Part shown: positions 237 to 14,645 of the stretch, one piece after another
Layout of the letters: every line of letters begins with the position of its first letter
Numbering within the stretch: position 1 is the first letter of the stretch
IMG/VR virus record: IMGVR_UViG_3300005826_000294
Location: 62,001-126,000 of that record
Length of the DNA stretch: 64,000 bases
Direction: 5' to 3' (one strand)
Position numbers and translations under genes: made by a program
The notes under the pieces: generated by a model
What the model was told of the DNA's origin: nothing
The model's database searches: none
What the model saw: the letters and a program-made list of their open reading frames with translations, nothing else

Positions 237-1019
237 TTACTTTTTCCCCCATATAAAATGTTCTTCTTCTAATTTTTTTATTTTAAATGGAGGAGTGTTG
301 TTTATTACAATTGAATTTAAATTTCTTCTTTCTAAAGCATTTTGTAATGCCTTTTTAGCATTTAAATCTTGTTCTGTTCTTGATTTTGTTGAGACTTGAT
401 TACTATGTTGTCTATAATAATAAGTTATAGGATCTTTAATTCTATGTATTTTAAATTTTTCATCAATTTTAAGAGCCAAATCATAATCTACAGCAGAAGT
501 TAATTCATTAGAGTATCCACCAACATTTTTTATAACTGATTTTCTATAAAATCTCATAGGAAATAAACACATATATTTAAGAAGAACATTTGAATCATAT
601 TCTCCACTTTTTTCTACATGAGGCAAAACCCATTTTTTTTCATTATTAAAACATATAAAATTACCACAGCAGGCTCCTATATCAGGATGTTTGTCCATAT
701 AATTAACAAAAATTTCTAAACAATTAGTAGGAATTAAATCATCACTTCCAACATGACAAATATATTTATGATCATCTAATTTTTCAATACATTCATTTTT
801 AATTTGTCCTATTTTACCAGAATGTTTCTCTCTTCTATAAAAAGAAAACCTTGAATCTTTTATAGATTTAGTTTTTTCAAATGTTTTATCTTCTGAACAA
901 TCATCTATTAAAATATATTGAAAATTACTATAAGTTTGATTAATAATACTATTAATTGATTCATTTATATATTTTTCAACATTATGTGCTGGAACATAAA
1001 TACCTACTGAATTTAACAT
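237..1019 (-). CDS. GT2-family glycosyltransferase
   Basis: YVPAHNVEKYINESINSIINQTYSNFQYILIDDCSED N-terminus; GSDD (DxD-like); DYDLALKI. Confidence 0.9.
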   Translation of the reverse strand: MLNSVGIYVPAHNVEKYINESINSIINQTYSNFQYILIDDCSEDKTFEKTKSIKDSRFSFYRREKHSGKIGQIKNECIEKLDDHKYICHVGSDDLIPTNCLEIFVNYMDKHPDIGACCGNFICFNNEKKWVLPHVEKSGEYDSNVLLKYMCLFPMRFYRKSVIKNVGGYSNELTSAVDYDLALKIDEKFKIHRIKDPITYYYRQHSNQVSTKSRTEQDLNAKKALQNALERRNLNSIVINNTPPFKIKKLEEEHFIWGKK

Positions 1020-1354
1020 TTTTTCCTCTTAAATAATGGATATTTACATAAATCTAAAGTTCCATTTATGTTTAGAAACCAAACATCAGCATTAAGTCGT
1101 TTATCAATTACACCACTATAACCTGTATAACCATCATCATGCTTTATTGAAACTTGAATATATTTTTTATTAGAATATTTATCTTTATATTCTATAAAAC
1201 TTGCAACAACAGGATTTTTATTATTTAATTGATCTATAGAATTCCATTTATTTCCATTAACCAAATTATTATTTATCCATTTAACTGCTACCTTATTATA
1301 CGAAAGTTTGTCTCCAATTTCAACAAAAAATCTGCTAGAATTGAGAATTTTCAT
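1013..1354 (-). CDS. hypothetical protein
   Basis: Open frame; likely start is ATG at 1354 (AGAGG upstream, TAATG overlap with the upstream gene's stop) rather than 1396. Confidence 0.6.
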   Translation of the reverse strand: MKILNSSRFFVEIGDKLSYNKVAVKWINNNLVNGNKWNSIDQLNNKNPVVASFIEYKDKYSNKKYIQVSIKHDDGYTGYSGVIDKRLNADVWFLNINGTLDLCKYPLFKRKKC

Positions 1355-2301
1355 TAAAAAACCTCTTTGTATGCTTTTTTCATTATACTTTCCCATTTAA
1401 ACATATTAACAGATTTAAGACTATTCTTTATTATATTCTCTCTTTCAGTATCATGATTTAAATAATATTTAATTAAATCAACACAATCACATAAAGAATA
1501 AAACCATACAATATCTTTATGATTTGTAAAATAATTTTCAAGTTTAGGAATGTATTTTGTAATCATTAAATTTCCTGAAGCCATTCCTTCAATCATTCTA
1601 ATAGACCAATAATGTTCTATATTATTGAAATGATTAATATTTAATATTATTTTTGATTTATTATAAAAATCATTAATTTTAGGAAGACTAAAAAATCCTA
1701 AAATATTTTCTTTTGGGATGAATTTATCCCATCCATTTCCTAAAATCTTAATGTTAAAATGTTTTATTAAATAAGATATTATTCCAACTCTCTCAATTGT
1801 TCCGGGGAAACCACTATTTTTATAAACATTTCCAGCAAATACAATATCATATTCTTTATTAATGTTTTTTTTAAAAAATAATAAATCACTAAATCCTTCT
1901 TGTAATATTTTACAATTTAACCCATTTTTTTGATACTCATGTTTTCTTCCTTTTTGAAAGCAAACATCAACATATTTCCCAGCACTAATTGTATATTTAT
2001 CTAATTCATTTCTCATATCAACAGACATAAGAGATATTTTTATATTAGGATGTCTTTCTTTGACTACTTTAAAAAAATCAGGCAAAATAATTGGATTATA
2101 TTGATATTGACAAAAAATCCAGTCTGGTATATGTTCATCAATGAGTTGTAAAATTTGATAATGACCTTCTTTTTGTCCATATTTTCTTATAAATGATCTA
2201 TAACCAAAATAACCTGTTTCTATATCCATATTATTAAGACCATTAACCATTGATATCCCATTTTCTATATATTCAGTTGCTCCAATTATAAAAGTTTTCA
2301 T
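1354..2301 (-). CDS. CgeB-like GT-B glycosyltransferase (Glyco_trans_1_2 type)
   Basis: YDIVFAG...SKIILNINHFNNIEHYWSIRMIEGMASGNLMIT...LENYF; start at 2301 from ATGA overlap. Confidence 0.8.
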   Translation of the reverse strand: MKTFIIGATEYIENGISMVNGLNNMDIETGYFGYRSFIRKYGQKEGHYQILQLIDEHIPDWIFCQYQYNPIILPDFFKVVKERHPNIKISLMSVDMRNELDKYTISAGKYVDVCFQKGRKHEYQKNGLNCKILQEGFSDLLFFKKNINKEYDIVFAGNVYKNSGFPGTIERVGIISYLIKHFNIKILGNGWDKFIPKENILGFFSLPKINDFYNKSKIILNINHFNNIEHYWSIRMIEGMASGNLMITKYIPKLENYFTNHKDIVWFYSLCDCVDLIKYYLNHDTERENIIKNSLKSVNMFKWESIMKKAYKEVF

Positions 2302-3002
2302 AAATCTTTCCATTTTGTTATAATACAATTATGAGGATTTGTTTTTTCTATATTTTTATATTCTCCAATTAAAATAATATTACATCCACAACATAACGCA
2401 AAATCAACCAATCCACTCGGAGGAGATATTAAAAATTCAGAATTATTAAATACATTAATTTGCTCACTAATGTTATTTGTAAATTTAATATTTAAATCAA
2501 ATCTTTCTTTATAAAATCCATGTCCTATTATCTCTTTATTTTGATAGTTGGATTTAATCCATTTAATATGTTCTTTCATTTCAATGTTTTTTTTTGGTCT
2601 TATTGAACGTTTTCGCGGAAATATTGAGATATATCTTTTTACTTTATTTTGTTTTCCAAAAATAAGTTTTTTATTTAGAATATTAAAAACTTTATGAGTA
2701 TCATCATAAAAAAATTTATAATTAGGATCAATAGAAAAAAAGTGTTTAAACCCTTCTGTTTCAAGAAATTTTGTTGTTTCAACATGTCTAAAATGAGTAC
2801 AATCTCTATATTTTTCTTCTAGACTATATTTAACTATATTTTCTATATTTATCGTATCATATCTATTAGGCCATAATAAATTTATTAAATAACATACTGA
2901 TGGCCAAGTAACTAAACTAATATCAACAGTATTAATTTCAAGAAATGGAAGGAGTTGTCTAAAAATATATCCAAATTCTCCAAGAAAATAAAGTTTTTCC
3001 AT
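2298..3002 (-). CDS. putative GT-B glycosyltransferase (weak GT9-like), paralog of 7224-7928
   Basis: KLYFLGEFGYIFRQLLPFLE matches KLYFIGEYGFGFRQLFPFLE; C-terminal QINVFNNSEFLISPPSGLVDFALCCGCNIILI resembles the GT9 C-terminal lobe. Confidence 0.5.
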   Translation of the reverse strand: MEKLYFLGEFGYIFRQLLPFLEINTVDISLVTWPSVCYLINLLWPNRYDTINIENIVKYSLEEKYRDCTHFRHVETTKFLETEGFKHFFSIDPNYKFFYDDTHKVFNILNKKLIFGKQNKVKRYISIFPRKRSIRPKKNIEMKEHIKWIKSNYQNKEIIGHGFYKERFDLNIKFTNNISEQINVFNNSEFLISPPSGLVDFALCCGCNIILIGEYKNIEKTNPHNCIITKWKDL

Positions 3003-3070
3003 TATGGTTTATCGCAAATACTATAAAGTTTTTTAACTTTAGCAAAACCTATAAGAAGTTTTTCACGCAT
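3002..3070 (-). CDS. 22-aa small ORF (not in ORF track)
   Basis: AAGGAG 5 nt before ATG at 3070; MREKLLIGFAKVKKLYSICDKP*; TAA overlaps the next ATG (TAATG at 3000-3004). Confidence 0.55.
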   Translation of the reverse strand: MREKLLIGFAKVKKLYSICDKP

Positions 3071-3111
3071 AAAAAGCTCCTTATTTGCCAAGAATTTATT
3101 TTTTATTTTAT

Positions 3112-3795
3112 TCATTTTTTTATAACATATGCTGTTGGACAAACATAATCTAAAGATTTAACCAACACTCCTTTATTTTTAAAAAATTCATCAACACCAA
3201 TACTTTCTGACCACTTATGATAAGCATATTCATCAAATATTACAATACCACCTATAGAAACCCTATTCCAAAAAGATCTTAAAGCATAATATGTAGGATC
3301 ACAAAGATCAAAATCCATATAAAGTAAAGATATTTTAAATCCAGGGTTTTTTAAGATATATTCTGGAGCAGTATTTTTTATATCTCCTTTAATTAGTTCA
3401 AAATCTCTATCAACAAACCCAGCATTCAATATTTTCTCTCTAACATCATTTAATGAATGGGCATTATGTTTAATATTACGACTACTAAACAAATTTTTCA
3501 TTTCCTCTGCATCTCGACCACTTATTGTATTTAATAACTTATCTGTTTCAAAAAAATCAAAACCTATAACTCTTTTTATAGAATTTGAAAAAAAGATTTT
3601 TTTTAATTTAAGAAAAGTGACCATTCCAGAGCCTATAAAAACTCCACATTCTACAATATCTCCTGGTATTTGTTTTGTTTTATCAACAAAAAGAGATCTA
3701 GCAACTAATTTTCCTAATACTTTTGTTTCATCTGTGAAAATAAAATCATTAAAAGAATTGTATGTCTCTTTTAAAGTATTATCAAAAATATCCAT
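3112..3795 (-). CDS. TylF/MycF-family sugar O-methyltransferase
   Basis: IPGDIVECGVFIGSG, GFDFF, LIKGDI..T, ISLLYMDFDLCDPT, GGIVIFDEY. Confidence 0.88.
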   Translation of the reverse strand: MDIFDNTLKETYNSFNDFIFTDETKVLGKLVARSLFVDKTKQIPGDIVECGVFIGSGMVTFLKLKKIFFSNSIKRVIGFDFFETDKLLNTISGRDAEEMKNLFSSRNIKHNAHSLNDVREKILNAGFVDRDFELIKGDIKNTAPEYILKNPGFKISLLYMDFDLCDPTYYALRSFWNRVSIGGIVIFDEYAYHKWSESIGVDEFFKNKGVLVKSLDYVCPTAYVIKK

Positions 3796-3797
3796 AA

Positions 3798-5150
3798 TTA
3801 TTTTCCATATTTATTAATCCATTTCTGTAAAAGCAAAGATCCAAGAAGATAAGAATAAGCAACAGATAAAACATTACTTTTAACATATTCTGTAACAGAA
3901 AGCCATATAATAGAAAGAAGAAAATCAATTTTTCTACCATATGATTTTATATTCTCAACTTCAAAACCATTACTACTTATAGGTAATAAGCATCCTCTAT
4001 TTAATAAATGCCAATTAGTTTTAGAGTAATATATTTTTGCTATATCATAATCAGCATCACCATATAAAAGAGAATTACCAAATATTCCTCTAGGATCTAT
4101 TACATAAGGAATATTATTTTCCCATAAAACATTTGATGAAGTAAGATCTCCATGTATTGGAACAAAACGATTAGGAACCATCTCCTCTATATTAATCTTA
4201 TTTAGATTAATTAATGGATTTAAACATTCTGTTTTATTTACTATAAATTTCTCACCAAAATTAGTTAAAAAACTAATTTTATTTAATCTTGAAATTGTCT
4301 TATCAATATACATATATTTACAATCTTCTAAAGAACTTGGAATAGAAGGTTTAAATATATGTATAAGATTAGCAATATAATACAAAGGTTTAATTTTATA
4401 AAACTTCTTAACACCATTTATTTTTTTCATTGTTAAAGGGTTATATGAAATTATATTTGGTATAAAACAAAAACCATTCATATTTTTATACCAATTCTCT
4501 TCTGAATTACGTAATTTTATATTCTTACACTCTTTAATTACAATATTATCTTTAATTGTAATAGTATTAAATGATCTTATAGGGTTTTTACAAGAAATTA
4601 ATTTTTTATTATATTTTTTAGTATCTCCAATATCAATAGCAGGAATAACAACTTCTTCAAAATCTTTAATATTAATAGCATCTAATAATGTTATTTCTCT
4701 ATTTAAATTAGGTAAAACTTTTGGATAAGTAATTTCATTTTTATTCCAAAGAAAAACACCATAAATTCCACCATTTTTTCCATTAAATGAGCATAAAATA
4801 TTAGGACTACTAAAAAAAATATTTTTATTGGTTGTGGGTTTTTCTAAAGGTAAAACATCACACCAATTAAGAATAACTCTGTTATTTTTAGATCTTAACA
4901 ATCCTGATTGTACAGCATATCCAGATCCTTTTCTATTTTCAACAACATATATATATTTATTTTCAGTATATTGTTTAACAATATTTAATATATTATCTCT
5001 AACAACTATAATTACTTCATCAGCATTCCAAAATTCTATAATATGATTAATAATTGCTTTATTATATAAAGGTAATAATAACTTTGGATATATAAATTTC
5101 TTTAATCTTAAACCTAATCCAGCAGATGGAATTATAAGAGAAGTTTTCAT
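3798..5150 (-). CDS. sugar-phosphate nucleotidyltransferase fused to an APH/choline-kinase-like phosphotransferase
   Basis: N-terminal LIIPSAGLGLRL...PKLLLPL; C-terminal HGDLTSSNVL and VIDPRG kinase motifs. Confidence 0.8.
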   Translation of the reverse strand: MKTSLIIPSAGLGLRLKKFIYPKLLLPLYNKAIINHIIEFWNADEVIIVVRDNILNIVKQYTENKYIYVVENRKGSGYAVQSGLLRSKNNRVILNWCDVLPLEKPTTNKNIFFSSPNILCSFNGKNGGIYGVFLWNKNEITYPKVLPNLNREITLLDAINIKDFEEVVIPAIDIGDTKKYNKKLISCKNPIRSFNTITIKDNIVIKECKNIKLRNSEENWYKNMNGFCFIPNIISYNPLTMKKINGVKKFYKIKPLYYIANLIHIFKPSIPSSLEDCKYMYIDKTISRLNKISFLTNFGEKFIVNKTECLNPLINLNKINIEEMVPNRFVPIHGDLTSSNVLWENNIPYVIDPRGIFGNSLLYGDADYDIAKIYYSKTNWHLLNRGCLLPISSNGFEVENIKSYGRKIDFLLSIIWLSVTEYVKSNVLSVAYSYLLGSLLLQKWINKYGK

Positions 5151-6094
5151 ATATTTTTTCCTATAGTTCCACCAGAATGGTTTAATAAATAATCTTCACG
5201 GTTACATCTATAACTATATGTAATTACTTTTAAAATTGAAAAATAAGTTTTTAAATATTCTTGTATTGTAATTTGTGGACTAAAACCAAGAAACGAATTT
5301 TCAATAATATTATCTATAACTAATATATTTTTAAAATAAGGAATAGCTTTAGCATTTGAATTAGAAGTTATTAAAAAGGTATTTAATTTATTAAACTTTT
5401 TATATAATGATTTCATCATATTTATTAATTCTTCAGTATCTCCAGATTTGGAAGAAGCAATAACAATATCATTTATATTAATTAGTCCTAAACTTCCATG
5501 AGAACTATGATTAGCATCTAAAGGAACAGCAACAATATTATAAGGAAGAAAAAATTCACTAACCAATTGAGCCAAAGAAAAATTCTTACCAACCCCAGTA
5601 ATTACTATTTTTCCAGAAATAGAATCTCTTATTTTTTTAGCAAAACTTAATATATTTTCTTTTCTTATCCAATTTAATATATGAGGAAAAACATTTTTTC
5701 CAGCTAATGTGGGCAATATAAAATCAGAATTATTTTTTGCTTGTGGTGTTGAATCATTTAAACAAAGATTTATTAAAGCATTAGGTTCATTAATTCCATC
5801 TCCAACATATACACAAGGCATATTTTCATCTATAAGTTTTTGTCTTTCTTCAACTTTACTAAAAATATAGTTAATTCCCATTTCTTTACATCTTATTTCA
5901 TTAATTTTAGATCCAGAAGATGTATTATCTGCAGAACATAATATTATTTCATTAAAATATTTCTTTAGAATAGGAATTGAAGGCCGATCATTACTACTAA
6001 AAGATTTTACTATTTTTCCATCAATTGAATAAAAATGCTCACCAGATGTTATTATTCCATCTATATCACAGATTAATTTCATTATTTTCTCCAC
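5147..6094 (-). CDS. KdsC-like HAD phosphatase fused to KdsD/GutQ-like SIS sugar-phosphate isomerase
   Basis: CDIDGIITSG and YVGDGINE (HAD); KIVITGVGK...HGSLG...SSKSGDTEE (SIS); no CBS domains. Confidence 0.8.
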   Translation of the reverse strand: MEKIMKLICDIDGIITSGEHFYSIDGKIVKSFSSNDRPSIPILKKYFNEIILCSADNTSSGSKINEIRCKEMGINYIFSKVEERQKLIDENMPCVYVGDGINEPNALINLCLNDSTPQAKNNSDFILPTLAGKNVFPHILNWIRKENILSFAKKIRDSISGKIVITGVGKNFSLAQLVSEFFLPYNIVAVPLDANHSSHGSLGLININDIVIASSKSGDTEELINMMKSLYKKFNKLNTFLITSNSNAKAIPYFKNILVIDNIIENSFLGFSPQITIQEYLKTYFSILKVITYSYRCNREDYLLNHSGGTIGKNI

Positions 6095-7227
6095 TTAATG
6101 TTTGGAACTATAATAGAACTATCTATTTTACTTTTAAATGGAATTAGATCTTTAAACATACTTTTTAGTTCTTCTAACATATCAGATGTAGGTTTATAAC
6201 CTAAATTTAAAAGAATATTATGATCAACATTATACTCATGATCTTCCTTTTCAATTCTTGGATTTTCTATATTTGAGATTGTTGTTTCAATTCCAAATTC
6301 TTTTGCTACAATAGAAACATTTTTAGCAAGTTCAGATAGATCATAAATCTCTTCAAATTGATTAATAATCCTATATTTACCATTTTTTGGAGGATTATCA
6401 ATAATAATAGAAATACATTGTATTGAATCTCTTAAAGGAAGAAATCCTCTTTTTTGATGACCTTTTCCAAATAAAGTAATAGGAAATCCTTTAATAGCTT
6501 GAACAACAAAACGATTAATTGCAGTACCAAAAATACCATCATAATCAAATCTTGTTTTAAATTCACTAAATTCTATGTCACCTATATTAGTACCATAAAC
6601 AACACCCTGCATAATATCAGTACAAGTTATTCCCCAAATACGATTAGCAAAATCTATATTTATACTATCATGAACTTTTGTAGCATGATAGAAACTTCCA
6701 GGAAGTCTAGGAAACATCACCCTATCTTTTTTATTTTTATATTCTATCTCAAAGAAACCTTCTGCGATAGGAATATTAGGAGTTCCAAATTCGCCCATTG
6801 AACCAAGCTTAATTAAATGAATTTCTGGACAAACTTCATAAATAGCATAAAGAAGTGATAAATTGCCAATAACATTATTAAAATGAGTAAAAGAAGCATG
6901 CTTAAAATCAATCATAGAATATGGTGCAGATGGAATTTGACCTAAATTTACTATAACATCAGGCTTAAATTTTATTAAAGCAGATTTGAGAAAATTAAAA
7001 TTAGTCATATCAAATTTTAATATTTCTATTTCTCCAATAAATCTGCGAAAAACTTTTTGTCTTTTTGATATAGAAGATATTGGAATTAAAGAATTTCCTC
7101 CAAATTTTTTTACAAATTTTCTTCTGCTTAAATTATCTATTCCAAATATCTTATGTCCTTTACACCCTAAAAATTGAGCTAAAGGCCATCCTAAATATCC
7201 ATCAATTCCACAAATTAAAACTCTCAC
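6082..7227 (-). CDS. sqdB: UDP-sulfoquinovose synthase
   Basis: GIDGYLGWP, GIDNLSRR, LIKLGSMGEFGTP, PGSFYHATKVHDS, TDIMQGVVYG, RFDYDGIFGTAINRF, QKRGFLPLRDSIQC; GTG start at 7227 (GTGA overlap). Confidence 0.9.
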   Translation of the reverse strand: MRVLICGIDGYLGWPLAQFLGCKGHKIFGIDNLSRRKFVKKFGGNSLIPISSISKRQKVFRRFIGEIEILKFDMTNFNFLKSALIKFKPDVIVNLGQIPSAPYSMIDFKHASFTHFNNVIGNLSLLYAIYEVCPEIHLIKLGSMGEFGTPNIPIAEGFFEIEYKNKKDRVMFPRLPGSFYHATKVHDSINIDFANRIWGITCTDIMQGVVYGTNIGDIEFSEFKTRFDYDGIFGTAINRFVVQAIKGFPITLFGKGHQKRGFLPLRDSIQCISIIIDNPPKNGKYRIINQFEEIYDLSELAKNVSIVAKEFGIETTISNIENPRIEKEDHEYNVDHNILLNLGYKPTSDMLEELKSMFKDLIPFKSKIDSSIIVPNIKWRK

Positions 7228-7928
7228 AAATTCTCCCATCTATCTATTTTACAACTATGATAATTTACCTTATCTAAAGTTTCATATTCATCAGTTAATA
7301 TAATATTACATCCACACATTAAACCTAAATCAGCCATTCCACTAGCAGGAGTTATAAATACCTCGGAATTATTTAATACATTTATTTGATGATAAATATC
7401 ACGACAAAAATCAATATTTAAATTAAATCTTTCATTTTCTAAACCATGACCCATAATTTTTTTATTTGGAAATTTATATTTAAGCCATTTTATATGATCC
7501 CTGCCTGTTATATTTTTATTAGGTTGAATTTTACGATTTCGTGGAAAAATGGAAACAAATTTTTTTTCTTCAAATTGCTCACCATACATTAATTTTGGTT
7601 TAACTAAATTATATACTTTTCTAACATTATCATAAAAAAATCTATTATTTTTATCAAAATTAAAACAATGAGAAAATCCCATTTCTATAAATTTTTTATT
7701 TATATTATCATCTCTATAATGATTACAATCTCTAAGACTTTCATTAATATTATTAATAAATAATTCTACAGAGATCATATTAAATCTTCCAGGCCATAAT
7801 ATATGTAAAATTCTAACTAGTGAATCCCAAGTTAGAATTTCAAGAGGCTTGTTATATTGTTCTAAAAATGGAAATAATTGCCTAAATCCAAAACCATATT
7901 CCCCAATAAAATATAACTTATCTACCAT
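7224..7928 (-). CDS. putative GT-B glycosyltransferase (weak GT9-like), paralog of 2298-3002
   Basis: Co-linear similarity to 2298-3002 (FVSIFPRNRKIQPNKN vs YISIFPRKRSIRPKKN; FITPASGMADLGLMCGCNIIL). Confidence 0.5.
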   Translation of the reverse strand: MVDKLYFIGEYGFGFRQLFPFLEQYNKPLEILTWDSLVRILHILWPGRFNMISVELFINNINESLRDCNHYRDDNINKKFIEMGFSHCFNFDKNNRFFYDNVRKVYNLVKPKLMYGEQFEEKKFVSIFPRNRKIQPNKNITGRDHIKWLKYKFPNKKIMGHGLENERFNLNIDFCRDIYHQINVLNNSEVFITPASGMADLGLMCGCNIILTDEYETLDKVNYHSCKIDRWENL

Positions 7929-9319
7929 TCTTTAAAACCAAGACGAACAGATAATTCTCTTACTCTACAAAAATAACTATGGTTTTTATTTACTATTTTT
8001 GATCCTTGTTTTCCTATTTCCTCTCGTTTTTCATTATTGTTCAAATAATATTCAAGTAAATCATAACATTCTTTTTCATCTTTAAACCAAACAAGATCTT
8101 TACCATTTTCAAAATATTCTTCCATTCCAGGAATATACGAACTTAATGTTAATGTCCCACAGGCCATTGCTATTAATTGGCGTTTAGAAAAATATTTATA
8201 TACATTATTAAAATTATTAATACTTATAATTATTTTTGAAGCATTATAAACTTCATTTTGTTTTAAATATGAAATGTAATTACTTGGACGATCCCGCCAT
8301 TTTCCATATAATTTAAACCTATCTCCATATTTTATTTGAAGATGATTAATAACTTTTTTTCTAAGATTAGTCCCAGGAAAATTATGAGAAATATTATTAG
8401 CACAAAAAACAATATCATGTTTATATTTCTTATATAATTTATTTCTTATTTCATCAGGCATTCTATAAAAAGCATTAACATTAACCCCAACTTGCCAATA
8501 ATCAACATTTAAACTCCCAGCTTTTCTATACATTTCAAGTTGTCCCTCACTAGAAATAAGTGCTTTATGTATATGTTTTGATATATTAACAAAATAAGGA
8601 ACAGCATACTCTCTAATATCTATTGTATTATTTGTTATTATTGTATTAGGTAAATTTTCTCTAATCTGTAAAATAGTTGTTGGATCAACAGTTTTATCAA
8701 AAAATTGTAACTGCATATGTATCCAATCTGGTTTAAATAATAATGCCTCAGATTTTATAAAATTTTGGAGTTTTTCTTTTCCAAAACAATCCATATATTT
8801 ATTAAAACAAATAGCTTTTACACTGAATCCATTATCTACAAAAGCTTTAGTAAGAGCCATTTGATTTATCTCTTTTGTAGTATACCTTAAAAACAAAACT
8901 TTTAGAGATCCATTTTTATAATCTTCAATAAAACTATGTGATTTTATAGGTATTTTTGAATTATTAATTATTACTTTTCTTATAAAAACAGATCCTGTTC
9001 CCTCTTTTCCTCGCCAAATCCTTAATTTTATTGGAATATCTTTAGAAAAATCTTCAGTTATAATATTTACATCAAATTTTTTCCAATTATTTTCACACAC
9101 CAATTTTGAATGAGGAAAATCATAATATTTATTCCCATAAAAATTACAAAATATTACACCATTACCACCCTTACAATAAATTTCTAATGTTAATCTATAT
9201 ATAGTATTTGGAATAACATTAATGGGAAAATATAATAATGATGTATTATTTATCATTAAAACTTCTTTATTCTTTAATGAAAAAAGACGACCTTTCCACA
9301 TAGAGCTAGAAATTTCCAT
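7922..9319 (-). CDS. CgeB-like glycosyltransferase with an extra N-terminal beta-rich domain
   Basis: C-terminal HDIVFCAN...SKIIISINNFNNVYKYFSKRQLIAMACG; first ~120 aa are similar to the N-terminus of 29847-31358. Confidence 0.8.
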   Translation of the reverse strand: MEISSSMWKGRLFSLKNKEVLMINNTSLLYFPINVIPNTIYRLTLEIYCKGGNGVIFCNFYGNKYYDFPHSKLVCENNWKKFDVNIITEDFSKDIPIKLRIWRGKEGTGSVFIRKVIINNSKIPIKSHSFIEDYKNGSLKVLFLRYTTKEINQMALTKAFVDNGFSVKAICFNKYMDCFGKEKLQNFIKSEALLFKPDWIHMQLQFFDKTVDPTTILQIRENLPNTIITNNTIDIREYAVPYFVNISKHIHKALISSEGQLEMYRKAGSLNVDYWQVGVNVNAFYRMPDEIRNKLYKKYKHDIVFCANNISHNFPGTNLRKKVINHLQIKYGDRFKLYGKWRDRPSNYISYLKQNEVYNASKIIISINNFNNVYKYFSKRQLIAMACGTLTLSSYIPGMEEYFENGKDLVWFKDEKECYDLLEYYLNNNEKREEIGKQGSKIVNKNHSYFCRVRELSVRLGFKEW

Positions 9320-9382
9320 TAGTTATTTCTTATCCTTATATTGTTATACGAAATTTCATATATATAAAATTCAACAAAAAAA

Positions 9383-10699
9383 TTATTTTTGTTCATCAAA
9401 ATCATTTTCCCAAATAAAAACAATTTTATATCCTGCAGTTTTTATTAAGTTTTCTCTTTTAATTGTATTTTCATAAAGAGTACCATATGTTTTTTTATTT
9501 ATAGGATTTATTTCATTTTTGCTATAAATTTTTGGATTCCCATGCCAAAAATCACCATAAAATTCATAAACTATATTTTCAATTAATGCATCAACATAAA
9601 ATTTCTTTTTATTTATAATAATACAAATTTCTCTATTAGATAAATCTATATTTAGTCGGTCTAGCCATAAATTACATTTTTTTGATGAATTTAAATGTTT
9701 TACACAAACTGGACATCCAGCAATCTGACTTCTACTATTAACAGTGGCAAACCAAGAATGATTATTTTTACACTTCCACCACACTTTCTTTGAACTATGT
9801 GGAGTAACATCATATGGAGTTATAGAATTTTTTTTAAAATCCCACTCTAATGCTAAATCTGGGTTTATTGTAAATAAACAATTATCAATACAAACTTTTT
9901 TATTTGAACAATATGGACAATTTGTTCCAAAACTGCGATGGCTCACTGAAGTCTTCCAAGAATGGTTGTTTTTACATTTCCACCAAATTTTTTTTGAACT
10001 ATATGGGGTAACATCATGTGGAGTTATAGAGTTTTTTATATAATCCCACTCTAATACTAAATCTGGATTTATTGTAAATAAACAATTATCAATACAAACT
10101 TTTTTATTTGAACAATATGGACATCCATCTTCACGACATGTTCTATTACATAGAGGAGAATACCAAGAATGATTATTCTTACATTTCCACCAAACTTTCT
10201 TATTAGATTTACTATGAATCATAGAGGGTAAAATTATATTTTTATTATAGTCCCACTCACATAATAATTCTGGATTTCTTATTTTTAAATTATTTATATC
10301 ATTTACAATCTTGCCAGAACAACATGGGCAACCATGATTAGTTCTACTATTTGGAGAATTTTTCCACTCGTATCCACATTTACATTTCCACCAAACTTTT
10401 TTGTTGCTTTTTGCTGTAATTTCATTAGTCTTAATTATATTTTTTTTGCTCCACTCCTTGGCAAGATTATGAGCTTTTACTAATAAAGAATTTTCCAAAC
10501 ATACACGCTGTCCAGAACAATATGGACATCCATCCCCACGAGATATTCTTTTATCAATTGGTGCAAACCAAGAATGATTATTTTTACATTTCCACCAAAC
10601 TTTTTTTGAACTTCCGATTGTAATGTTTTCTGGAAAAATATTATTTTTTATAAAGTCCCACTCACTTACAATACTAAACTCCGAAACCTTAGGTTTCAT
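9383..10699 (-). mobile_element. zinc-ribbon repeat protein with C-terminal PD-(D/E)xK/Vsr-like nuclease; probable free-standing homing endonuclease
   Basis: Five KK[VI]WWKC...W...CP.C repeats; C-terminal FYVDALIENIVYEFYGDFWHGNP...GYKIVFIWE. Confidence 0.75.
9841..10123. repeat. 79-bp direct repeat (9841-9919 and 10045-10123), 204-bp offset
   Basis: Manual alignment shows 2 mismatches in 79 nt. Confidence 0.9.
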
Positions 10700-12878
10700 T
10701 ATCTTCTTCCTTTTTAGAATTTACACCTAAAAGTTTACAATCATAATCTACCATACGTTTAACTAACTCTTCAAACTTTACTTTAGGTTCCCACCCAATA
10801 AGTTCTGTTGTTTTAGAATAATCTCCACAGAGATCATTTACTTCGGCAGCTCGCATATAAAACCTATCAATTTCTACATAATCTTCCCAATTTAATCCAA
10901 CATGACCAAAAGCAATTTCGCAAAACTCTTTAACTGAGTGAGTCTCTCCCGTTGCAAATATATAATCATTTGGTTTAGGTTGTTGAAGAGTCATAATAAA
11001 ACCCTCACAATATTCTTTGGCTAACCCCCAATCTCGTCTTGCATTTAAATTACCCAACTTTAACTTAAAACTTGGATTTTTAAGAGCCTGTGCTACACCC
11101 ATAGATATTTTTCTAGTTACGAAATTTGGGCCTCTTCTCCCCGGTTCTTCATGGTTGAACGTTACTCCAGCACAACAATACATATTATATGATTCTCTAT
11201 ACAATCTTATAAAATGATGACTAGCAACCTTAGCTATCGCATATGGACTTTGTGGCATATAAATAGTTTCAGTATTTTGAGGAGCAGGAGAAGAACCAAA
11301 CATTTCACTAGTATTGTGAACTAAGATTGGAGACACACCACAATACCATTTTTCAGTATCCTTAACTGAAAAATCACCAACACGCTGATGTATATGAAGT
11401 TTTTCTATTTGTTGTATTTTTTCCATATTAATATCTGAATTTTCAAAATGGCACAAATTTTCTCCAGAGATATTTTTTATATTAATATCTTTCTTTTGTA
11501 TTTTATAACTAGAGAAGTTATGTAACTCATCCTTTGAAATTATAATATCCCAAACTAAAGAATCTTTAGTTAGTATTTGTTGTGGCAATAAGAATGATTT
11601 AACAAATCTATTATGTAAATGCCCACCAATACCAATTAATCTTAATAACCATAATATATCAATTGCCAAATCCTTATATATAGTTGTATATTTTATTTCT
11701 CTTTCATCTATTTTAGCGCCTCCTAAATAACCATTTAAAAAAGAAATCTTTACACTTGTTGAAGATTCATATAATTCACTAGGTAATCTTTTAGAATGAG
11801 AATTATTTTCAGCATATTTAGAAAAAAAAGAACAAATTTTTCTTTTACATATGGACACTTGAGTAGAATTTTTTTTAATCCTAATATTACTCTTATATTT
11901 AAAATATTTTTCAATTATATTTTTAGTTTCTTCTGATCTATTACAATTAAAAGCATGGTTGCTAAATGTTAAAGTTATACTTTCATTTCCATGACTTTTA
12001 GAATAATATCCTTCTGCCATATAAATTCCTAATAAATATGCTATTTCTTCATTTAATAAAATACTTTCATTAAATTTACTATTTAAAATTTTAGTTCCCT
12101 TATTTCGCTCTACTTTATGTTTTAAAAAAAAATCCCATTTTAGTTTCTTATATTTATCATGTTTGTAAAAATCTTCTTGATTACAAAAAGTTATTAAATG
12201 GTCACCAACAGATAAATCCGAAACTTTAGTTTCAACAAACCTATTATTATATAAAGTAATCAAAGAATGATCTGGAGTCACAATTAAATCTTTTCCCCCA
12301 GAAAAACTAATTTTATAAACTTGTTTAAATCCATGATCAACAACATCCATTACTTGCTTAAAACATGTTTTTCCATCATTATCAGCTGTTAAAACCTCAA
12401 ACGAATTATGTTCGCCCTTCTTCCATAAATTAAAAGCATTTTCTAATGTAGTTCTATTCAACACTCCATTATATTTAATTAATACCGGAGTATTAAAAAC
12501 TATTGAACTCGCATGAAAAATTCTTGTAGAATAACCTAACAATTTAATACTTTCTAAAATATTAACAACTCCTTTTGTATCGATATCTAATGTAGCTAAT
12601 GGTTGTTCAAAACTCGTATGAACGTGAGACATTGCTGCCATATTATATAATTCATGAGGACGAGTATCTCGAACGATGCGTAACATTGAAGACATATCAG
12701 TAATATCACCTTCAAAAATATCAATCTTATTTTCCAAATGAACTACATTGCCAAAATTATTGGTTGCATTTCTTCTCATTACACCAATTACATTATATTC
12801 CTTTTCTAATAATAAATCGGCTAATAAACTTCCATCTTGGCCACAAATTCCTATTATTAATGCAGTTTTTTTCTTCAT
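10689..12878 (-). CDS. gmd: GDP-mannose 4,6-dehydratase interrupted by an intein
   Basis: GICGQDGSLLA, YNMAAMSHVHTSF, IFHAS[intein]TSEMFG, PQSPYAIAK, FNHEEPGRRGPNFVTRKI, LGNLNARRDWG; spliced length 331 aa. Confidence 0.95.
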   Translation of the reverse strand: MKKKTALIIGICGQDGSLLADLLLEKEYNVIGVMRRNATNNFGNVVHLENKIDIFEGDITDMSSMLRIVRDTRPHELYNMAAMSHVHTSFEQPLATLDIDTKGVVNILESIKLLGYSTRIFHASSIVFNTPVLIKYNGVLNRTTLENAFNLWKKGEHNSFEVLTADNDGKTCFKQVMDVVDHGFKQVYKISFSGGKDLIVTPDHSLITLYNNRFVETKVSDLSVGDHLITFCNQEDFYKHDKYKKLKWDFFLKHKVERNKGTKILNSKFNESILLNEEIAYLLGIYMAEGYYSKSHGNESITLTFSNHAFNCNRSEETKNIIEKYFKYKSNIRIKKNSTQVSICKRKICSFFSKYAENNSHSKRLPSELYESSTSVKISFLNGYLGGAKIDEREIKYTTIYKDLAIDILWLLRLIGIGGHLHNRFVKSFLLPQQILTKDSLVWDIIISKDELHNFSSYKIQKKDINIKNISGENLCHFENSDINMEKIQQIEKLHIHQRVGDFSVKDTEKWYCGVSPILVHNTSEMFGSSPAPQNTETIYMPQSPYAIAKVASHHFIRLYRESYNMYCCAGVTFNHEEPGRRGPNFVTRKISMGVAQALKNPSFKLKLGNLNARRDWGLAKEYCEGFIMTLQQPKPNDYIFATGETHSVKEFCEIAFGHVGLNWEDYVEIDRFYMRAAEVNDLCGDYSKTTELIGWEPKVKFEELVKRMVDYDCKLLGVNSKKEEDNET
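11313..12506 (-). mobile_element. intein (398 aa) with degenerate LAGLIDADG endonuclease
   Basis: Starts SIVFNTPVL, block B TPDH, block C YLLGIYMAEGY, block E FLNGYLGGAK, block F VGDFSV, ends LVHN followed by Thr. Confidence 0.93.
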
Positions 12879-13795
12879 TAAAGTCCCCGTAAATTTGGAT
12901 AATTTTTAATAAACCATTTATATGTTTTTTCTAAACCAGTAAAAAGTGTAGTAAATTTTATATCATTTTTTATTAAATTTTTAAATTTTGTTGTATCAGA
13001 TGGTTTTTTAAATTGTCCTTCTGGCATATTAGTATTAAAAACTATGTTACCATTATATTCAACAACTTTTTTAATATTTTTAACAAGTTCATTAATAGAA
13101 TATTCTTTATTATATCCAATATTAATAGGTTCCTCTTCATTATAATGTTCCATTACATAAATCATACAATCAGCAATATCAGATGAATATGTAAATTCTC
13201 TCATACAATTTCCAGAACCCCAAATTTCTATCTCATTTAAATTATTAAGTTTTGCTTCATGAAATCTTAACATTAATGCTGGAATTACATGACAACCATA
13301 TCCATACTGATCATTTGGACCATATATATTATTTGGGATCACACAAACAAAATTACATCCATATTGTTTTCTATATACTCTTGATTGAACATCAAGCATT
13401 CTTTTTGTAAAAGCATATGAAAAATTTGATTGATGAGGAAAACCATTATGTAATTGGTCTTCTGTTAATGGATAGTTTACATTATCTGGATAAACACAAG
13501 TACTTAAAACAGATATAACCTTTTTTACTTCTGTTTTATAACATGCATCTAAAACATTTGAATTTATTCTTATATTTTGTATATAAAATTCTGCTAGATA
13601 TTTAGAATTTTCTAAAACACCTCCAACACGAGATGCAAGATGAAAAACTATATCTGGTTTATTTTTTAACATAAAAGATAATACTTTTTCACTATTTTCT
13701 AAATCTAATTCTTTTCTTGTAGGGCAAATTGAATATATTTTTTTTCTTAATGCTCTTCCTAACATTCCATGTCCACCAGTAATTACGACTTTCAT
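12878..13795 (-). CDS. fcl: GDP-L-fucose synthase
   Basis: ITGGHGMLG, HLASRVGGV, STCVYP, YAFTKR, PNNIYGPND, WGSGNCMREFTY; adjacent to gmd. Confidence 0.92.
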   Translation of the reverse strand: MKVVITGGHGMLGRALRKKIYSICPTRKELDLENSEKVLSFMLKNKPDIVFHLASRVGGVLENSKYLAEFYIQNIRINSNVLDACYKTEVKKVISVLSTCVYPDNVNYPLTEDQLHNGFPHQSNFSYAFTKRMLDVQSRVYRKQYGCNFVCVIPNNIYGPNDQYGYGCHVIPALMLRFHEAKLNNLNEIEIWGSGNCMREFTYSSDIADCMIYVMEHYNEEEPINIGYNKEYSINELVKNIKKVVEYNGNIVFNTNMPEGQFKKPSDTTKFKNLIKNDIKFTTLFTGLEKTYKWFIKNYPNLRGL

Positions 13796-13811
13796 TTATT
13801 ACTCCTTAATA

Positions 13812-14639
13812 TTAAAAAATTTCATGACTAATAATAACTTTTGGATCTCCCCAAATATGATCTGTATTTGCTATATAATTATAATTTTTTAAATTTTCTC
13901 GCATTAATAAAAGATTTTTATCTCTCATTTCTTTTTCTGTGTATCGTAAAATATGTTTTTTTGTATTTAAATTTGAATGATCTTGATGAATTCCAATTAT
14001 ATTATGTTCAAAAACAGGAGTAACTCCAAACATTTTCATTCGATTAGAAAAATCATCATCTTCAGCACAAAACCCTTCACCAAATCTTTCATCTATTCCT
14101 CCTATTTTTTCTACATATTCTTTCTTAACAACACAAAAATAATAATAAGCAGGTGGATGAGGAGGTCTAGTTAAACAATTATTTTTTGCACCTGGAAGTT
14201 TTAATAAACCATCAAATGATTTATTCCAATTTTTATTGATAATATCAATAAAAATACTATTTGACTTATATACTAATCCATATCCACATTGTTTTCTATT
14301 AATAAATGAAGATGCTACTTTTATATTATTTTTATTTTGAAGGGTTTCTGGGCCAGTTATACAAACAATATTACTTCTAGCCATTCTCATTCCAACATTA
14401 TTACTTAATACAGGAGTAAATGTTGTAATTGGAACATCACATTTAGAATTATCTATTTGAATATATTGGAAGTTTAAGTTAGGATAATTATTACATAATT
14501 CTCTTATATCTTGCCTATTTCCATCATCAATAAGAACGAGTTCAAAATCTTTTTCTGTTTGATTATTCCAAGTATCAAGAGCGCGATTAAAATAAGAAAA
14601 TCTATTATCACATAAAGATATTACCACTGAAACTTTCAT
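13812..14639 (-). CDS. GT2-family glycosyltransferase, paralog of the C-terminal domain of 29847-31358
   Basis: FELVLIDDG, NNVGMRMARS, GGIDERFGEGFCAEDDDF; shared ITGPETL and GIHQDH motifs. Confidence 0.85.
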   Translation of the reverse strand: MKVSVVISLCDNRFSYFNRALDTWNNQTEKDFELVLIDDGNRQDIRELCNNYPNLNFQYIQIDNSKCDVPITTFTPVLSNNVGMRMARSNIVCITGPETLQNKNNIKVASSFINRKQCGYGLVYKSNSIFIDIINKNWNKSFDGLLKLPGAKNNCLTRPPHPPAYYYFCVVKKEYVEKIGGIDERFGEGFCAEDDDFSNRMKMFGVTPVFEHNIIGIHQDHSNLNTKKHILRYTEKEMRDKNLLLMRENLKNYNYIANTDHIWGDPKVIISHEIF

Positions 14640-14645
14640 TGCGAT

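What the first reader, a model, noticed from the sequence alone, without database searches (positions are those of the whole stretch)
3798..6094. Two fusion genes that together give isomerase, kinase, phosphatase and nucleotidyltransferase
Seen: HAD+SIS fusion next to nucleotidyltransferase+APH-like kinase fusion; no KdsA or KdsB recognised, so Kdo synthesis is not indicated. Known: the four activities match the logic of the GmhA/HldE/GmhB NDP-heptose route, KdsD-type SIS enzymes make arabinose-5-phosphate, and some T4-like phages such as RB69 arabinosylate their DNA. Inference: a complete two-protein route from a ketose phosphate to an NDP-pentose or NDP-heptose, using different folds from the classical heptose pathway.
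Basis: partly seen in the sequence, partly recalled or inferred. Interest (0 to 1): 0.6.

Follow-up and report, generated by a model that had tools for sequence, protein, structure and literature searches.

The report
Phage two-gene NDP-arabinose synthesis cassette
Two overlapping genes in a huge uncultured phage carry the four enzyme domains of the arabinose-nucleotide pathway recently described in RB69-like phages, rearranged and placed in a large sugar-building gene island instead of beside DNA-modification genes.

Summary
Window 3798-5150 (-) encodes a sugar-1-phosphate nucleotidyltransferase fused to an APH/choline-kinase-fold kinase. Window 5147-6082 (-) encodes a KdsC-type HAD phosphatase fused to an arabinose-5-phosphate-isomerase-type SIS domain. 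The ORF runs to 6094, but the likely start is the ATG at 6082.

The window lies in a 301.7-kb jumbo myophage record. The nucleotidyltransferase-kinase is a full-length homologue of RB69 gp52:53 (AfhE). That family is reported to make UDP-D-arabinofuranose from ribulose-5-P, together with an isomerase and a small HAD phosphatase. NDP-heptose is unlikely. The "different folds" claim is only partly right.

Two things differ here:
- The usual small HAD is replaced by a KdsC-type HAD fused to the isomerase. About 27 metagenomic proteins and 2 giant-virus MAG loci share this fusion.
- The cassette sits in a ~34-kb island of soluble sugar enzymes beside the tail-fibre genes.

The record has only a canonical ThyA, no homologue of the RB69 arabinosyltransferase tested (gp003), no KdsA/KdsB and no lipid-carrier machinery.

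The product most likely feeds a glycan built in the cytoplasm, possibly on the virion. That last step is inference. I rate it a new variant of a known kind, of moderate interest.

The parts
5147..6082 (-). HAD-SIS fusion gene (311 aa from ATG 6082; the ORF extends to GTG 6094, 315 aa, P0002)
   Evidence: database copy P0003 has 311 aa
5660..6082 (-). KdsC/YrbI-type HAD phosphatase domain (P0002 residues ~1-145). DxD motif at D10/D12 and GDG at 98-100 are invariant.
   Evidence: NCBIfam TIGR01670 E 1.5e-7; profile vs KdsC 1j8d E 1.8e-13; hhalign vs E. coli KdsC E 8.7e-10; Foldseek 1k1e
5150..5647 (-). Single-domain (no CBS) arabinose-5-phosphate-isomerase-type SIS domain (P0002 residues ~150-315)
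   Evidence: K170, H199, E222, E265 and H306 align with KdsD K59, H88, E111, E152 and H193 and are invariant in 20 homologues; phrog_5670 E 1.1e-21; tree
3798..5150 (-). Nucleotidyltransferase-kinase fusion gene (450 aa, P0001), AfhE / RB69 gp52:53 family
4581..5150 (-). Sugar-1-phosphate nucleotidyltransferase domain (residues 1-190; G11, R15, K23, D98 invariant)
   Evidence: RmlA Z 19.2, LicC 17.9, MurU 17.0, HddC 16.6
3801..4580 (-). APH/choline-kinase-fold kinase domain (residues ~191-450; HGDxxxxN at 333-340, D352)
   Evidence: LicA Z 14.6, FN3K 14.2, APH(4)-Ia 13.7; Pfam APH E 4.8e-4
2298..3002 (-). 234-aa protein with no Pfam hit, paralogue of 7224-7928. The family sits next to the cassette in every related locus read. 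GT9-like, so a candidate transferase for the product.
7224..7928 (-). Second 234-aa GT9-like paralogue
   Evidence: Atlas feature score 0.97 and TM 0.71-0.77 to viral 'GT9 heptosyltransferase-like' clusters
3112..3795 (-). TylF-type sugar O-methyltransferase, conserved near the cassette (57% identical homologue in L004)
1354..2328 (-). PF13524 (Glyco_trans_1_2) glycosyltransferase, conserved near the cassette
6082..7239 (-). UDP-sulfoquinovose-synthase-like SDR directly upstream; its stop overlaps the start of the HAD-SIS gene
   Evidence: NF041015 E 1.3e-150, 501.7 bits vs cut-off 575
237..33604 (-). ~34-kb island of glycan-synthesis genes at about 25% GC in a ~30% GC genome. It holds GTs, methyltransferases, GMD/GFS and a dTDP-aminodideoxyhexose set. 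All products are predicted soluble.

Best explanation
The two overlapping, probably translationally coupled genes encode a complete four-activity route from D-ribulose-5-phosphate to an NDP-D-arabinose, most likely the furanose form.

Proposed steps:
1. The SIS domain isomerises Ru5P to D-arabinose-5-P.
2. The APH-fold kinase domain phosphorylates C1, giving arabinose-1,5-bisphosphate.
3. The KdsC-type HAD domain removes the 5-phosphate.
4. The N-terminal nucleotidyltransferase domain condenses arabinose-1-P with an NTP.

The step order follows what PMC13326640 reports for phage HY126 AfhE/AfhF. The 5-phosphate keeps the sugar in the furanose ring until C1 is fixed.

Shown here: domain identities, conserved catalytic residues, homology to the AfhE family, and conserved gene linkage.
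Inferred: the substrate, the step order, and the nucleotide (UDP by analogy).

In this jumbo phage the product most likely feeds a glycan assembled in the cytoplasm by the surrounding soluble glycosyltransferases. The GT9-like 234-aa paralogues and PF13524 GTs that always flank the cassette are candidates for the transfer. The acceptor is plausibly a phage protein such as the neighbouring tail fibres, not DNA. The acceptor is the weakest link.
For: - P0001 aligns full length with the RB69ORF052c family (E 7e-33). 371 phage records match, 365 over at least 80% of the protein.
- PMC13326640 gives the Ru5P to UDP-Araf scheme and cites the biochemistry on HY126.
- SIS domain: all five KdsD active-site residues are kept. 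It is 45% identical to RB69 gp55 over the core. It falls on the API side of the tree, not with GmhA.
- HAD domain: DxD and GDG are invariant and the type is KdsC.
- Domain-fusion evidence: NT+APH+SIS occur as one 707-aa protein (P0065) followed by a small HAD. A SIS, NT-kinase, small-HAD cassette occurs in RB69, in S-SRM01, and in loci from a Clostridia MAG and a Prochlorococcus assembly.
- The HAD-SIS fusion lies next to an NT-kinase gene in L004/5, L006 and L007.
- ATGA and TAATG overlaps join the genes.
- Glycan rather than DNA: the only ThyA homologue has L143, D169 and N177 of a true dTMP synthase and sits beside DHFR. RB69 gp003, gp46, gp47, gp50 and gp51 have no homologues.
- The cassette sits among GTs and methyltransferases, as it does in cyanophage S-SRM01 and in the two cellular loci read.
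- No PGT, Wzx or Wzy was found and the island has no TM segments.
- The island lies directly beside and co-oriented with the tail-fibre and baseplate genes.
Against: - There is no biochemistry on these proteins.
- Pfam hits for NTP_transf_3 and APH, and all NCBIfam hits, are below the curated cut-offs.
- The phosphatase is not homologous to the characterised AfhF type, so its substrate and the step order could differ.
- Fusing isomerase with phosphatase and kinase with transferase would also fit the order isomerase, phosphatase, kinase, transferase.
- The record is only about 75% complete by CheckV, so DNA-modification genes could lie in the missing part.
- The GT9-like neighbours recall heptosyltransferases.
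- No acceptor has been identified.
Confidence: 0.6

Rival explanations
1. Same end product, different order. The fused HAD first dephosphorylates arabinose-5-P to free D-arabinose. The kinase then acts as an anomeric arabinose 1-kinase, and the transferase makes NDP-arabinose, possibly the pyranose. Each protein would then perform two consecutive steps.
For: - The domain pairing (SIS+HAD, kinase+NT) fits consecutive steps.
- Table 1 of PMC13326640 lists this order as its first annotation for the DLP3 proteins.
- The APH-fold relatives (LicA, fructosamine-3-kinase, APH(4)-Ia) act on unphosphorylated small-molecule substrates.
- The HAD is of another subfamily than AfhF.
Against: - PMC13326640 reports that in HY126 AfhE phosphorylates Araf5P and AfhF removes a phosphate from Araf-1,5-P2.
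- HldE shows that non-consecutive steps are commonly fused (established knowledge).
- Free arabinose would be lost to the pyranose equilibrium.
Confidence: 0.2
2. The NDP-arabinose is used, as in RB69, DLP3 and HY126, to arabinosylate a modified base in the phage DNA.
For: - The closest characterised relatives of P0001 serve DNA modification.
- The record is incomplete.
- DNA glycosyltransferases are diverse and could hide among the island's many GTs.
Against: - The only thymidylate-synthase homologue is canonical (LPPCH, QRSCD...PFN) and paired with DHFR.
- RB69 gp48 hits only that ThyA, weakly (E 0.004). gp003, gp46, gp47 and gp50 hit nothing.
- The cassette is not next to replication or nucleotide genes as in T4-like phages. 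It sits in a 34-kb island with fucose, sulfoquinovose-like and aminodideoxyhexose genes.
Confidence: 0.1
3. P0002 is a KdsD-KdsC bifunctional enzyme that boosts host Kdo synthesis using host KdsA/KdsB, and P0001 is functionally unrelated.
For: - Both domains are closest to the Kdo-pathway enzymes.
- kdsD and kdsC are neighbours in E. coli.
- A SIS-CBS-HAD protein exists (P0034).
Against: - The record has no KdsA or KdsB.
- The SIS domain lacks CBS domains, like the phage isomerases.
- The fusion is always next to the NT-kinase, and SIS is fused to the NT-kinase in P0065.
- The stop and start overlap as ATGA.
Confidence: 0.05
4. P0001 is a LicC-LicA-like enzyme that makes a CDP-alcohol (choline, ethanolamine or similar) to decorate the glycan.
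For: LicC (Z 17.9) and LicA (Z 14.6) are among the best structural matches for the two domains.
Against: - There is no sequence-level hit to LicA or LicC.
- No LicD transferase is in the record.
- P0001 is homologous over its full length to the AfhE family.
- It is linked or fused to a sugar-phosphate isomerase.
Confidence: 0.04
5. The cassette makes an NDP-heptose from sedoheptulose-7-P.
For: - The logic is identical to GmhA/HldE/GmhB.
- GT9-like (heptosyltransferase-like) proteins flank the cassette.
- HddC is among the structural matches.
Against: - The SIS domain is separated from GmhA by a long 100/99 branch.
- No GmhA family hit appears.
- In the Prochlorococcus locus the cassette sits beside a separate, classical GmhA/HldE/GmhB set.
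- RB69 DNA carries arabinose (PMC6024577).
Confidence: 0.04

Closest known systems
UDP-D-arabinofuranose module of arabinosylating T4-like phages (RB69 gp55 + gp52:53 + gp51; DLP3 gp83/82/81; HY126 AfhE/AfhF)
   Same: - An API-type SIS isomerase without CBS domains.
- A bifunctional nucleotidyltransferase/APH-fold kinase that is homologous over its full length (27% identity).
- A HAD-superfamily phosphatase.
- Genes adjacent and co-oriented.
   Different: - The phosphatase is KdsC/YrbI-type and fused to the N-terminus of the isomerase. It is not a free 113-135-aa minimal HAD, and no sequence similarity to RB69 gp51 or the S-SRM01 HAD was detected.
- The record has no 5hodCMP synthase and no homologue of the RB69 arabinosyltransferase gp003.
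- The cassette sits in a glycan island, not in the polymerase-uvsX region.
SIS / NDP-sugar synthase / 3' phosphatase trio in the glycosylation cluster of Synechococcus phage S-SRM01 (MW015081)
   Same: - The cassette lies among GDP-mannose dehydratase, GDP-fucose synthase, fucosyl- and other glycosyltransferases and methyltransferases.
- Best phage hit of P0001 by E-value (5e-31).
   Different: - It has three separate genes with a small PNKP-like HAD.
- The phage is a 241-kb Kyanoviridae member.
Classical NDP-heptose routes (GmhA, HldE or HddA/HddC, GmhB)
   Same: - The same four-step logic: isomerase, anomeric kinase, distal phosphatase, nucleotidyltransferase.
- SIS and HAD folds are shared, and the nucleotidyltransferase fold is shared with HddC.
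   Different: - The isomerase belongs to the A5P branch of SIS.
- The kinase has an APH/ePK-like fold, not PfkB or GHMP.
- The HAD is KdsC-type, not GmhB-type.
- The substrate is a pentose.
Kdo pathway enzymes KdsD and KdsC
   Same: They are the closest characterised sequence and structure relatives of the two domains of P0002.
   Different: - No CBS pair.
- No KdsA or KdsB partner.
- Scores are far below the equivalog cut-offs.
- It is partnered with an NT-kinase.

Membership tests
Arabinose-5-phosphate isomerase (KdsD/KpsF/GutQ/c3406 type SIS) | SIS fold with closest similarity to API structures | tested here: met
   Profile vs 3etn 6.5e-19, 5uqi 7.5e-19, 2xhz 1.6e-10; Foldseek top hits 3etn, 5uqi (A5P complex), 2xhz
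Arabinose-5-phosphate isomerase (KdsD/KpsF/GutQ/c3406 type SIS) | Active-site residues K59, H88, E111, E152, H193 (E. coli KdsD numbering; this residue list is from my own recall of the KdsD literature) | tested here: met
   They align with K170, H199, E222, E265 and H306; all are invariant in 20 homologues
Arabinose-5-phosphate isomerase (KdsD/KpsF/GutQ/c3406 type SIS) | Score above the curated family cut-off, and the tandem CBS domains of KdsD/GutQ | tested here: not met
   TIGR00393 scores 44.5 bits vs 203.7; there are no CBS domains. It resembles the single-domain APIs (c3406, RB69 gp55) instead.
Arabinose-5-phosphate isomerase (KdsD/KpsF/GutQ/c3406 type SIS) | Ru5P/A5P isomerase activity | not testable with these tools
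   Needs an enzyme assay
KdsC/YrbI (HAD subfamily IIIA) phosphatase | HAD motif I DxD, motif IV acidic pair, and capless KdsC-like fold | tested here: met
   D10/D12 and G98-D99-G100 are invariant; hhalign vs E. coli KdsC E 8.7e-10; 1j8d E 1.8e-13; 1k1e by Foldseek
KdsC/YrbI (HAD subfamily IIIA) phosphatase | Equivalog-level score, and Kdo-8-P as substrate with KdsA/KdsB partners | tested here: not met
   TIGR01670 scores 31.5 bits vs 106.95; the record has no KdsA or KdsB
AfhE / RB69 gp52:53 bifunctional kinase-pyrophosphorylase | Full-length homology, with an N-terminal nucleotidyltransferase and a C-terminal APH-fold kinase | tested here: met
   E 7e-33 over 525 columns; phrog_4098 E 1.8e-44; folds
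AfhE / RB69 gp52:53 bifunctional kinase-pyrophosphorylase | Catalytic motifs of both domains (GxGxR...K; HGDxxxxN plus a downstream Asp) | tested here: met
   G11, R15, K23, D98, H333-G334-D335, N340 and D352 are invariant in 30 sequences
AfhE / RB69 gp52:53 bifunctional kinase-pyrophosphorylase | Adjacent API-type SIS gene | tested here: met
   ATGA overlap in the window; 33 of 46 viral SIS loci have the NT-kinase directly downstream
AfhE / RB69 gp52:53 bifunctional kinase-pyrophosphorylase | A5P 1-kinase and UDP-arabinose pyrophosphorylase activities | not testable with these tools
   Reported for HY126 only, second-hand through PMC13326640
AfhF-type small HAD phosphatase | Free 113-135-aa minimal HAD gene downstream of the NT-kinase | tested here: not met
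   No homologue in the record. The next gene is a TylF methyltransferase. P0002's HAD shows no similarity to RB69 gp51 or the S-SRM01 HAD.
Arabinosyl-5-hydroxycytosine DNA modification system | Thymidylate-synthase homologue with N177D, L143E and D169N (5hodCMP synthase) | tested here: not met
   The single PF00303 hit (334 bits) has L, D and N at these positions and is followed by DHFR
Arabinosyl-5-hydroxycytosine DNA modification system | DNA arabinosyltransferase homologous to RB69 gp003, or homologues of the neighbouring RB69 genes gp46, gp47 and gp50 | tested here: not met
   No hits at E <= 0.01 or E <= 1 worth noting. The record is about 75% complete, so absence is not proven.
GmhA/HldE/GmhB NDP-heptose pathway | GmhA-type SIS and PfkB or GHMP kinase | tested here: not met
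   GmhA is split off by a 100/99 branch; the kinase has an APH fold
LicC/LicA CDP-choline pathway | Sequence membership plus a LicD transferase | tested here: not met
   Only fold-level similarity; no LicD; no LicA/LicC sequence hit

The most novel reading that the evidence does not exclude
A jumbo phage uses a compact two-protein NDP-D-arabinofuranose pathway, together with sulfoquinovose-like, fucose and aminodideoxyhexose pathways and about a dozen soluble transferases, to build a complex glycan directly on its own tail fibres or capsid without any lipid carrier. This would be the first use of this arabinose-nucleotide route for glycan rather than DNA decoration. The same cassette in loci from a Prochlorococcus assembly, a Clostridia MAG, an archaeon-like contig and giant-virus MAGs would mark an unrecognised, widespread source of D-arabinofuranose in surface glycans.
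Probability: 0.3. Interest if true: 0.7.

Novelty: new variant of a known kind. Interest (0 to 1): 0.42.

Why it matters
- The Ru5P to UDP-arabinofuranose route was described only in 2025-2026, and only as a supplier for phage DNA hypermodification.
- Here the same enzyme family sits in a glycan island of a huge phage. In the two bacterial loci read it sits in polysaccharide clusters. This suggests the route is a general way to make activated D-arabinofuranose, a sugar otherwise known mainly from the lipid-linked mycobacterial pathway (my own knowledge).
- The HAD-SIS fusion shows that the phosphatase step was filled twice, by different HAD subfamilies. That gives a natural experiment on step order and substrate specificity.
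- A two-protein cassette would also be a convenient tool for enzymatic synthesis of NDP-arabinose.
- The island as a whole is a candidate system for phage virion glycosylation outside the mycobacteriophages.

Tried and rejected
- Bacterial origin of the window. No rRNA, tRNA or Rfam hit was found. The record is a 301.7-kb virus contig with tail, baseplate and replication PHROGs on both sides of the island.
- Kdo pathway: no KdsA or KdsB.
- CDP-choline: no LicD.
- DNA modification: canonical ThyA only, and no RB69 gp003, gp46, gp47 or gp50 homologues.
- Orthology of the HAD with RB69 gp51 or the S-SRM01 phosphatase: no similarity. The small ORFs after the NT-kinase in other genomes also show no BLAST similarity to RB69 gp51, but they give weak, consistent HAD hits.
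- Identity with the 'moraphage' lineage (PMC12619734): no HSP70 in the record, so left open.
- Nearest cultured phage by baseplate protein: only Bacillus phage G, at 29% identity over 27% of the protein. The host therefore remains unknown.
- The primary biochemical paper (He et al., Nat Chem Biol 2026) is not in the library. Its content is cited second-hand.
- Reads: only single 151-nt identical pieces in two estuary runs, one from an RNA library. This is too little to claim expression.
- No complex prediction was run, because no binding claim is made.
Full report
**Setting**

The window is bases 62,001-126,000 of a single 301,683-bp IMG/VR virus record (CheckV about 75% complete). The record is about 30% GC. 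By my crude ORF call, 96% is coding and 289 of 301 ORFs are on the minus strand. No rRNA, tRNA or Rfam family is present in the window.

To the right of the finding lie tail genes:
- a Baseplate_J protein,
- a sheath-initiator-like protein (its Pfam score is below the gathering cut-off),
- tail-fibre PHROGs,
- a 2303-aa fibre-like protein.

To the left lie replication genes: a DnaB-like helicase, DNA helicases and phage-only PHROGs such as phrog_22605 (E 7e-138).

The nearest cultured relative by the baseplate protein is Bacillus phage G, at 29% identity over a quarter of the protein. This is therefore an uncultured jumbo myophage with an unknown host. Single identical 151-nt pieces occur in two estuary runs.

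**The observation**

Both fusions exist as described.

P0001 (3798-5150, minus strand, 450 aa) hits NTP_transf_3 and APH just under Pfam's gathering scores. Stronger evidence supports both domains:
- The PHROG match is full length (phrog_4098, E 1.8e-44).
- The model is confident (pLDDT 93).
- Its first 190 residues superpose on sugar-1-phosphate nucleotidyltransferases: RmlA Z 19.2, LicC 17.9, MurU 17.0, HddC 16.6.
- Residues 189-446 superpose on LicA choline kinase (Z 14.6), fructosamine-3-kinase (14.2) and APH(4)-Ia (13.7).
- In an alignment of 30 homologues down to 24% identity, both sets of motifs are invariant. These are the nucleotidyltransferase signature (G11, R15, K23, D98) and the kinase motifs (H333-G334-D335...N340, D352).

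P0002 has a KdsC-type HAD domain (residues 1 to about 145) and a SIS domain (about 150-315):
- NCBIfam gives KpsF/GutQ 1.4e-11, KdsD 1.5e-11 and KdsC 1.5e-7.
- A profile of 20 homologues hits the A5P isomerases 3etn, 5uqi and 3fxa at about 1e-18 to 1e-19, and KdsC 1j8d at 1.8e-13.
- Foldseek on the model (pLDDT 80) agrees.
- Profile alignment to E. coli KdsD places K170, H199, E222, E265 and H306 on K59, H88, E111, E152 and H193. All five are invariant in the family, as are the HAD DxD (D10, D12) and GDG (98-100) motifs. The list of KdsD catalytic residues is from my own recall of the KdsD literature.

Two small corrections apply. The real start of the HAD-SIS gene is most likely the ATG at 6082: GGAG lies 6 nt upstream, it forms a TAATG overlap with the upstream stop, and the database copy has 311 aa. 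Its stop overlaps the start of P0001 as ATGA, which suggests translational coupling.

**What it is**

P0001 aligns end to end with the RB69ORF052c family (27% identity, E 7e-33 against Pseudomonas phage PspYZU05 gp075). It matches 371 phage records, mostly T4-like. In those phages the gene lies directly after an arabinose-5-phosphate isomerase gene.

The literature gives the following history:
- Thomas et al. 2018 (PMC6024577) proposed these genes as the source of UDP-arabinose for RB69 DNA arabinosylation.
- PMC13326640 (NAR 2026) lays out the scheme: Ru5P to Araf5P by the isomerase, to Araf-1,5-P2 by the kinase domain, to Araf1P by a small HAD, and to UDP-Araf by the nucleotidyltransferase domain.
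- That paper states that He et al. (Nat Chem Biol 2026) showed these activities for HY126 AfhE and AfhF. I could not read the primary paper.

**Pentose, not heptose**

In a maximum-likelihood tree of SIS domains, the two GmhA sequences are split from all A5P-isomerase-type domains by a long branch with 100/99 support. The nine HAD-SIS fusion domains form one clade (92/94), sister to two free SIS proteins. In the Prochlorococcus locus the cassette lies beside a separate, classical GmhA/HldE/GmhB set. RB69 DNA carries arabinose (PMC6024577).

**Linkage evidence**

The domains occur in three arrangements:
- SIS, NT-kinase and a small HAD as three genes. This is seen in RB69, in cyanophage S-SRM01, and in loci from a Clostridia MAG and a Prochlorococcus assembly. 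The small ORFs give weak but consistent PNKP/acid-phosphatase-type HAD hits.
- NT + kinase + SIS in one 707-aa protein followed by a small HAD (P0065).
- HAD-SIS plus NT-kinase, as here.

Of 46 IMG/VR loci with an API-type SIS relative, 33 have the NT-kinase starting right after it, and at least three of the others are cut at the contig end.

The HAD-SIS fusion has about 27 full-length metagenomic relatives in two clades, at 54-69% and 35-43% identity. In the three independent contexts read, the NT-kinase is its immediate neighbour. One of these (L007) looks cellular, perhaps archaeal. It has SecDF, an STT3-like protein, a Wzx-like flippase, a WecA-type transferase and a ribulose-phosphate 3-epimerase. 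Two giant-virus MAG loci also match the whole fusion.

**What differs from the known module**

1. The phosphatase. P0002's HAD is KdsC/YrbI-type and shows no detectable similarity to RB69 gp51 or the S-SRM01 phosphatase. No small HAD follows P0001, and none was found in the record. The step has therefore been filled by another HAD subfamily and fused to the isomerase. This leaves the step order open. The pairing SIS+HAD and kinase+transferase would also fit dephosphorylation before anomeric phosphorylation, and I keep this as the main rival (0.2).

2. The context.
   - The only thymidylate-synthase homologue in the record has the ThyA residues at the three positions that PMC13326640 uses to recognise dCMP-modifying enzymes (L143, D169, N177). 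It is followed by a DHFR.
   - RB69 gp003, gp46, gp47 and gp50 find nothing.
   - The cassette lies in a ~34-kb island (window 237-33604) at about 25% GC against 30% for the genome.
   - The island holds GT2, GT4, GT47-like and PF13524 transferases and several methyltransferases.
   - It also holds a UDP-sulfoquinovose-synthase-like enzyme, GDP-mannose dehydratase (with an intein) and GDP-fucose synthase.
   - An RmlA/RmlB/DegT/FdtA set is present as well.
   - None of the 34 island proteins has a TM-like segment in a crude hydropathy scan.
   - The whole record lacks WecA-type and Bac_transf initiating transferases, Wzx, and Wzy/ligase.
   - S-SRM01 carries its cassette in a comparable fucose/GT cluster.

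The most economical reading is a cytoplasmic glycan built on a soluble acceptor. The island is co-oriented with and directly adjacent to the tail-fibre genes, so virion proteins are plausible acceptors. Virion glycosylation is known in mycobacteriophages (Freeman et al. 2023, cited in PMC12619734). This is inference only.

**Candidate transferases**

A 234-aa family without Pfam hits has two paralogues flanking the cassette (2298-3002 and 7224-7928). Its homologues lie beside the cassette in L004, L006 and L007. The ESM Atlas places it with viral clusters labelled GT9 (heptosyltransferase)-like, with feature score 0.97 and TM 0.71-0.77. A PF13524 transferase (1354-2328) and a TylF-type O-methyltransferase (3112-3795) are also conserved neighbours. 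These are leads, not findings.

**Rivals considered**

| Rival | Confidence | Main evidence against |
|---|---|---|
| Different step order | 0.2 | HY126 biochemistry as reported in PMC13326640 |
| DNA modification | 0.1 | No partner genes, though the record is incomplete |
| Kdo supply | 0.05 | No KdsA/KdsB; tight coupling to the NT-kinase |
| LicC/LicA-like CDP-alcohol synthesis | 0.04 | Fold similarity only; no LicD |
| NDP-heptose | 0.04 | SIS tree and the Prochlorococcus locus |

**Verdict**

The route and the RB69 link are right. Heptose and 'different folds' are largely wrong, since SIS, HAD and the HddC-type transferase fold are shared with the heptose routes. The pathway is already known.
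- The fused KdsC-type phosphatase and the glycan-island setting in a jumbo phage make it a new variant of a known kind, of moderate interest.
- The standard code (table 11) was used throughout.

Noticed in passing
window 6082-7239 (-): A UDP-sulfoquinovose-synthase-like SDR lies directly upstream of the cassette and overlaps its start (NF041015, E 1.3e-150, 501.7 bits, just under the 575 cut-off). A phage-encoded sulfosugar step would be unusual.
   Followed up: partly
window 10689-12878 (-): This GDP-mannose 4,6-dehydratase is split by an intein (Intein_splicing E 3.4e-14; 729 aa). A GDP-fucose-synthase-like epimerase follows at 12878-13795.
   Followed up: no
window 31367-33604 and 33601-34500 (-); L004:4514-8113; L006:1-76: The 745-aa GT4 protein is uninterrupted here and is preceded by a free-standing LAGLIDADG endonuclease gene. 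Its homologues in related contigs are about 1200 aa, with faint to weak intein/LAGLIDADG hits inside (faint in L004, weak in L006).
   Followed up: partly
window 34766-37732 (-): A 988-aa protein is encoded at about 51% GC in a 30% GC genome. Its S+T is 20% and G+A is 20%, against 12% and 11% genome-wide. It has no Pfam or PHROG hit and lies between the tail-fibre genes and the glycan island. It could be a receptor-binding protein, a glycan acceptor or a recent acquisition.
   Followed up: partly
window 19076-20446 (-): A second fusion enzyme in the island joins HAD_2 (E 3.4e-28) to an NTP_transf_3-like domain (456 aa). It may be another phosphatase/mutase plus nucleotidyltransferase route.
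   Followed up: no
window 21891-25015 (-): An RmlA-like, RmlB-like, DegT aminotransferase and FdtA ketoisomerase set suggests a dTDP-3-amino-3,6-dideoxyhexose pathway.
   Followed up: no
window 9383-10699 (-): A 438-aa protein is made of five DUF4379 treble-clef zinc-finger repeats (E 1.3e-85) and sits in the middle of the sugar genes.
   Followed up: no
window 16524-17918 (+): These are the only two plus-strand genes of the island (224 and 233 aa, no Pfam hit). GC skew flips sign in this 2-kb bin. A radical SAM/SPASM protein lies next to them at 15846-16562 (-).
   Followed up: no
L013 (Prochlorococcus assembly GCA_017696075.1), 6631-15682: The SIS-CBS, NT-kinase and small-ORF cassette lies a few kb from a classical GmhA, HldE-like, NTP_transferase and GmhB-like heptose set in one polysaccharide region.
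   Followed up: partly
L052, L053 (IMG/VR giant-virus MAG contigs): Loci in giant-virus MAGs at 19-22% GC match the whole HAD-SIS fusion (residues 4/5-312, 26-27% identity). L052 also holds a short kinase-motif match 3.5 kb away.
   Followed up: partly
G000:C1:22605-23869 (outside the window): A canonical thymidylate synthase is directly followed by a DHFR. An amidase/peptidoglycan-binding-like protein lies upstream.
   Followed up: partly
window 4625-4775 and 5934-6084: Single 151-nt contigs identical to the cassette occur in two estuary runs, one filed as a metatranscriptome. This hints at an estuarine habitat but is too little to claim expression.
   Followed up: yes
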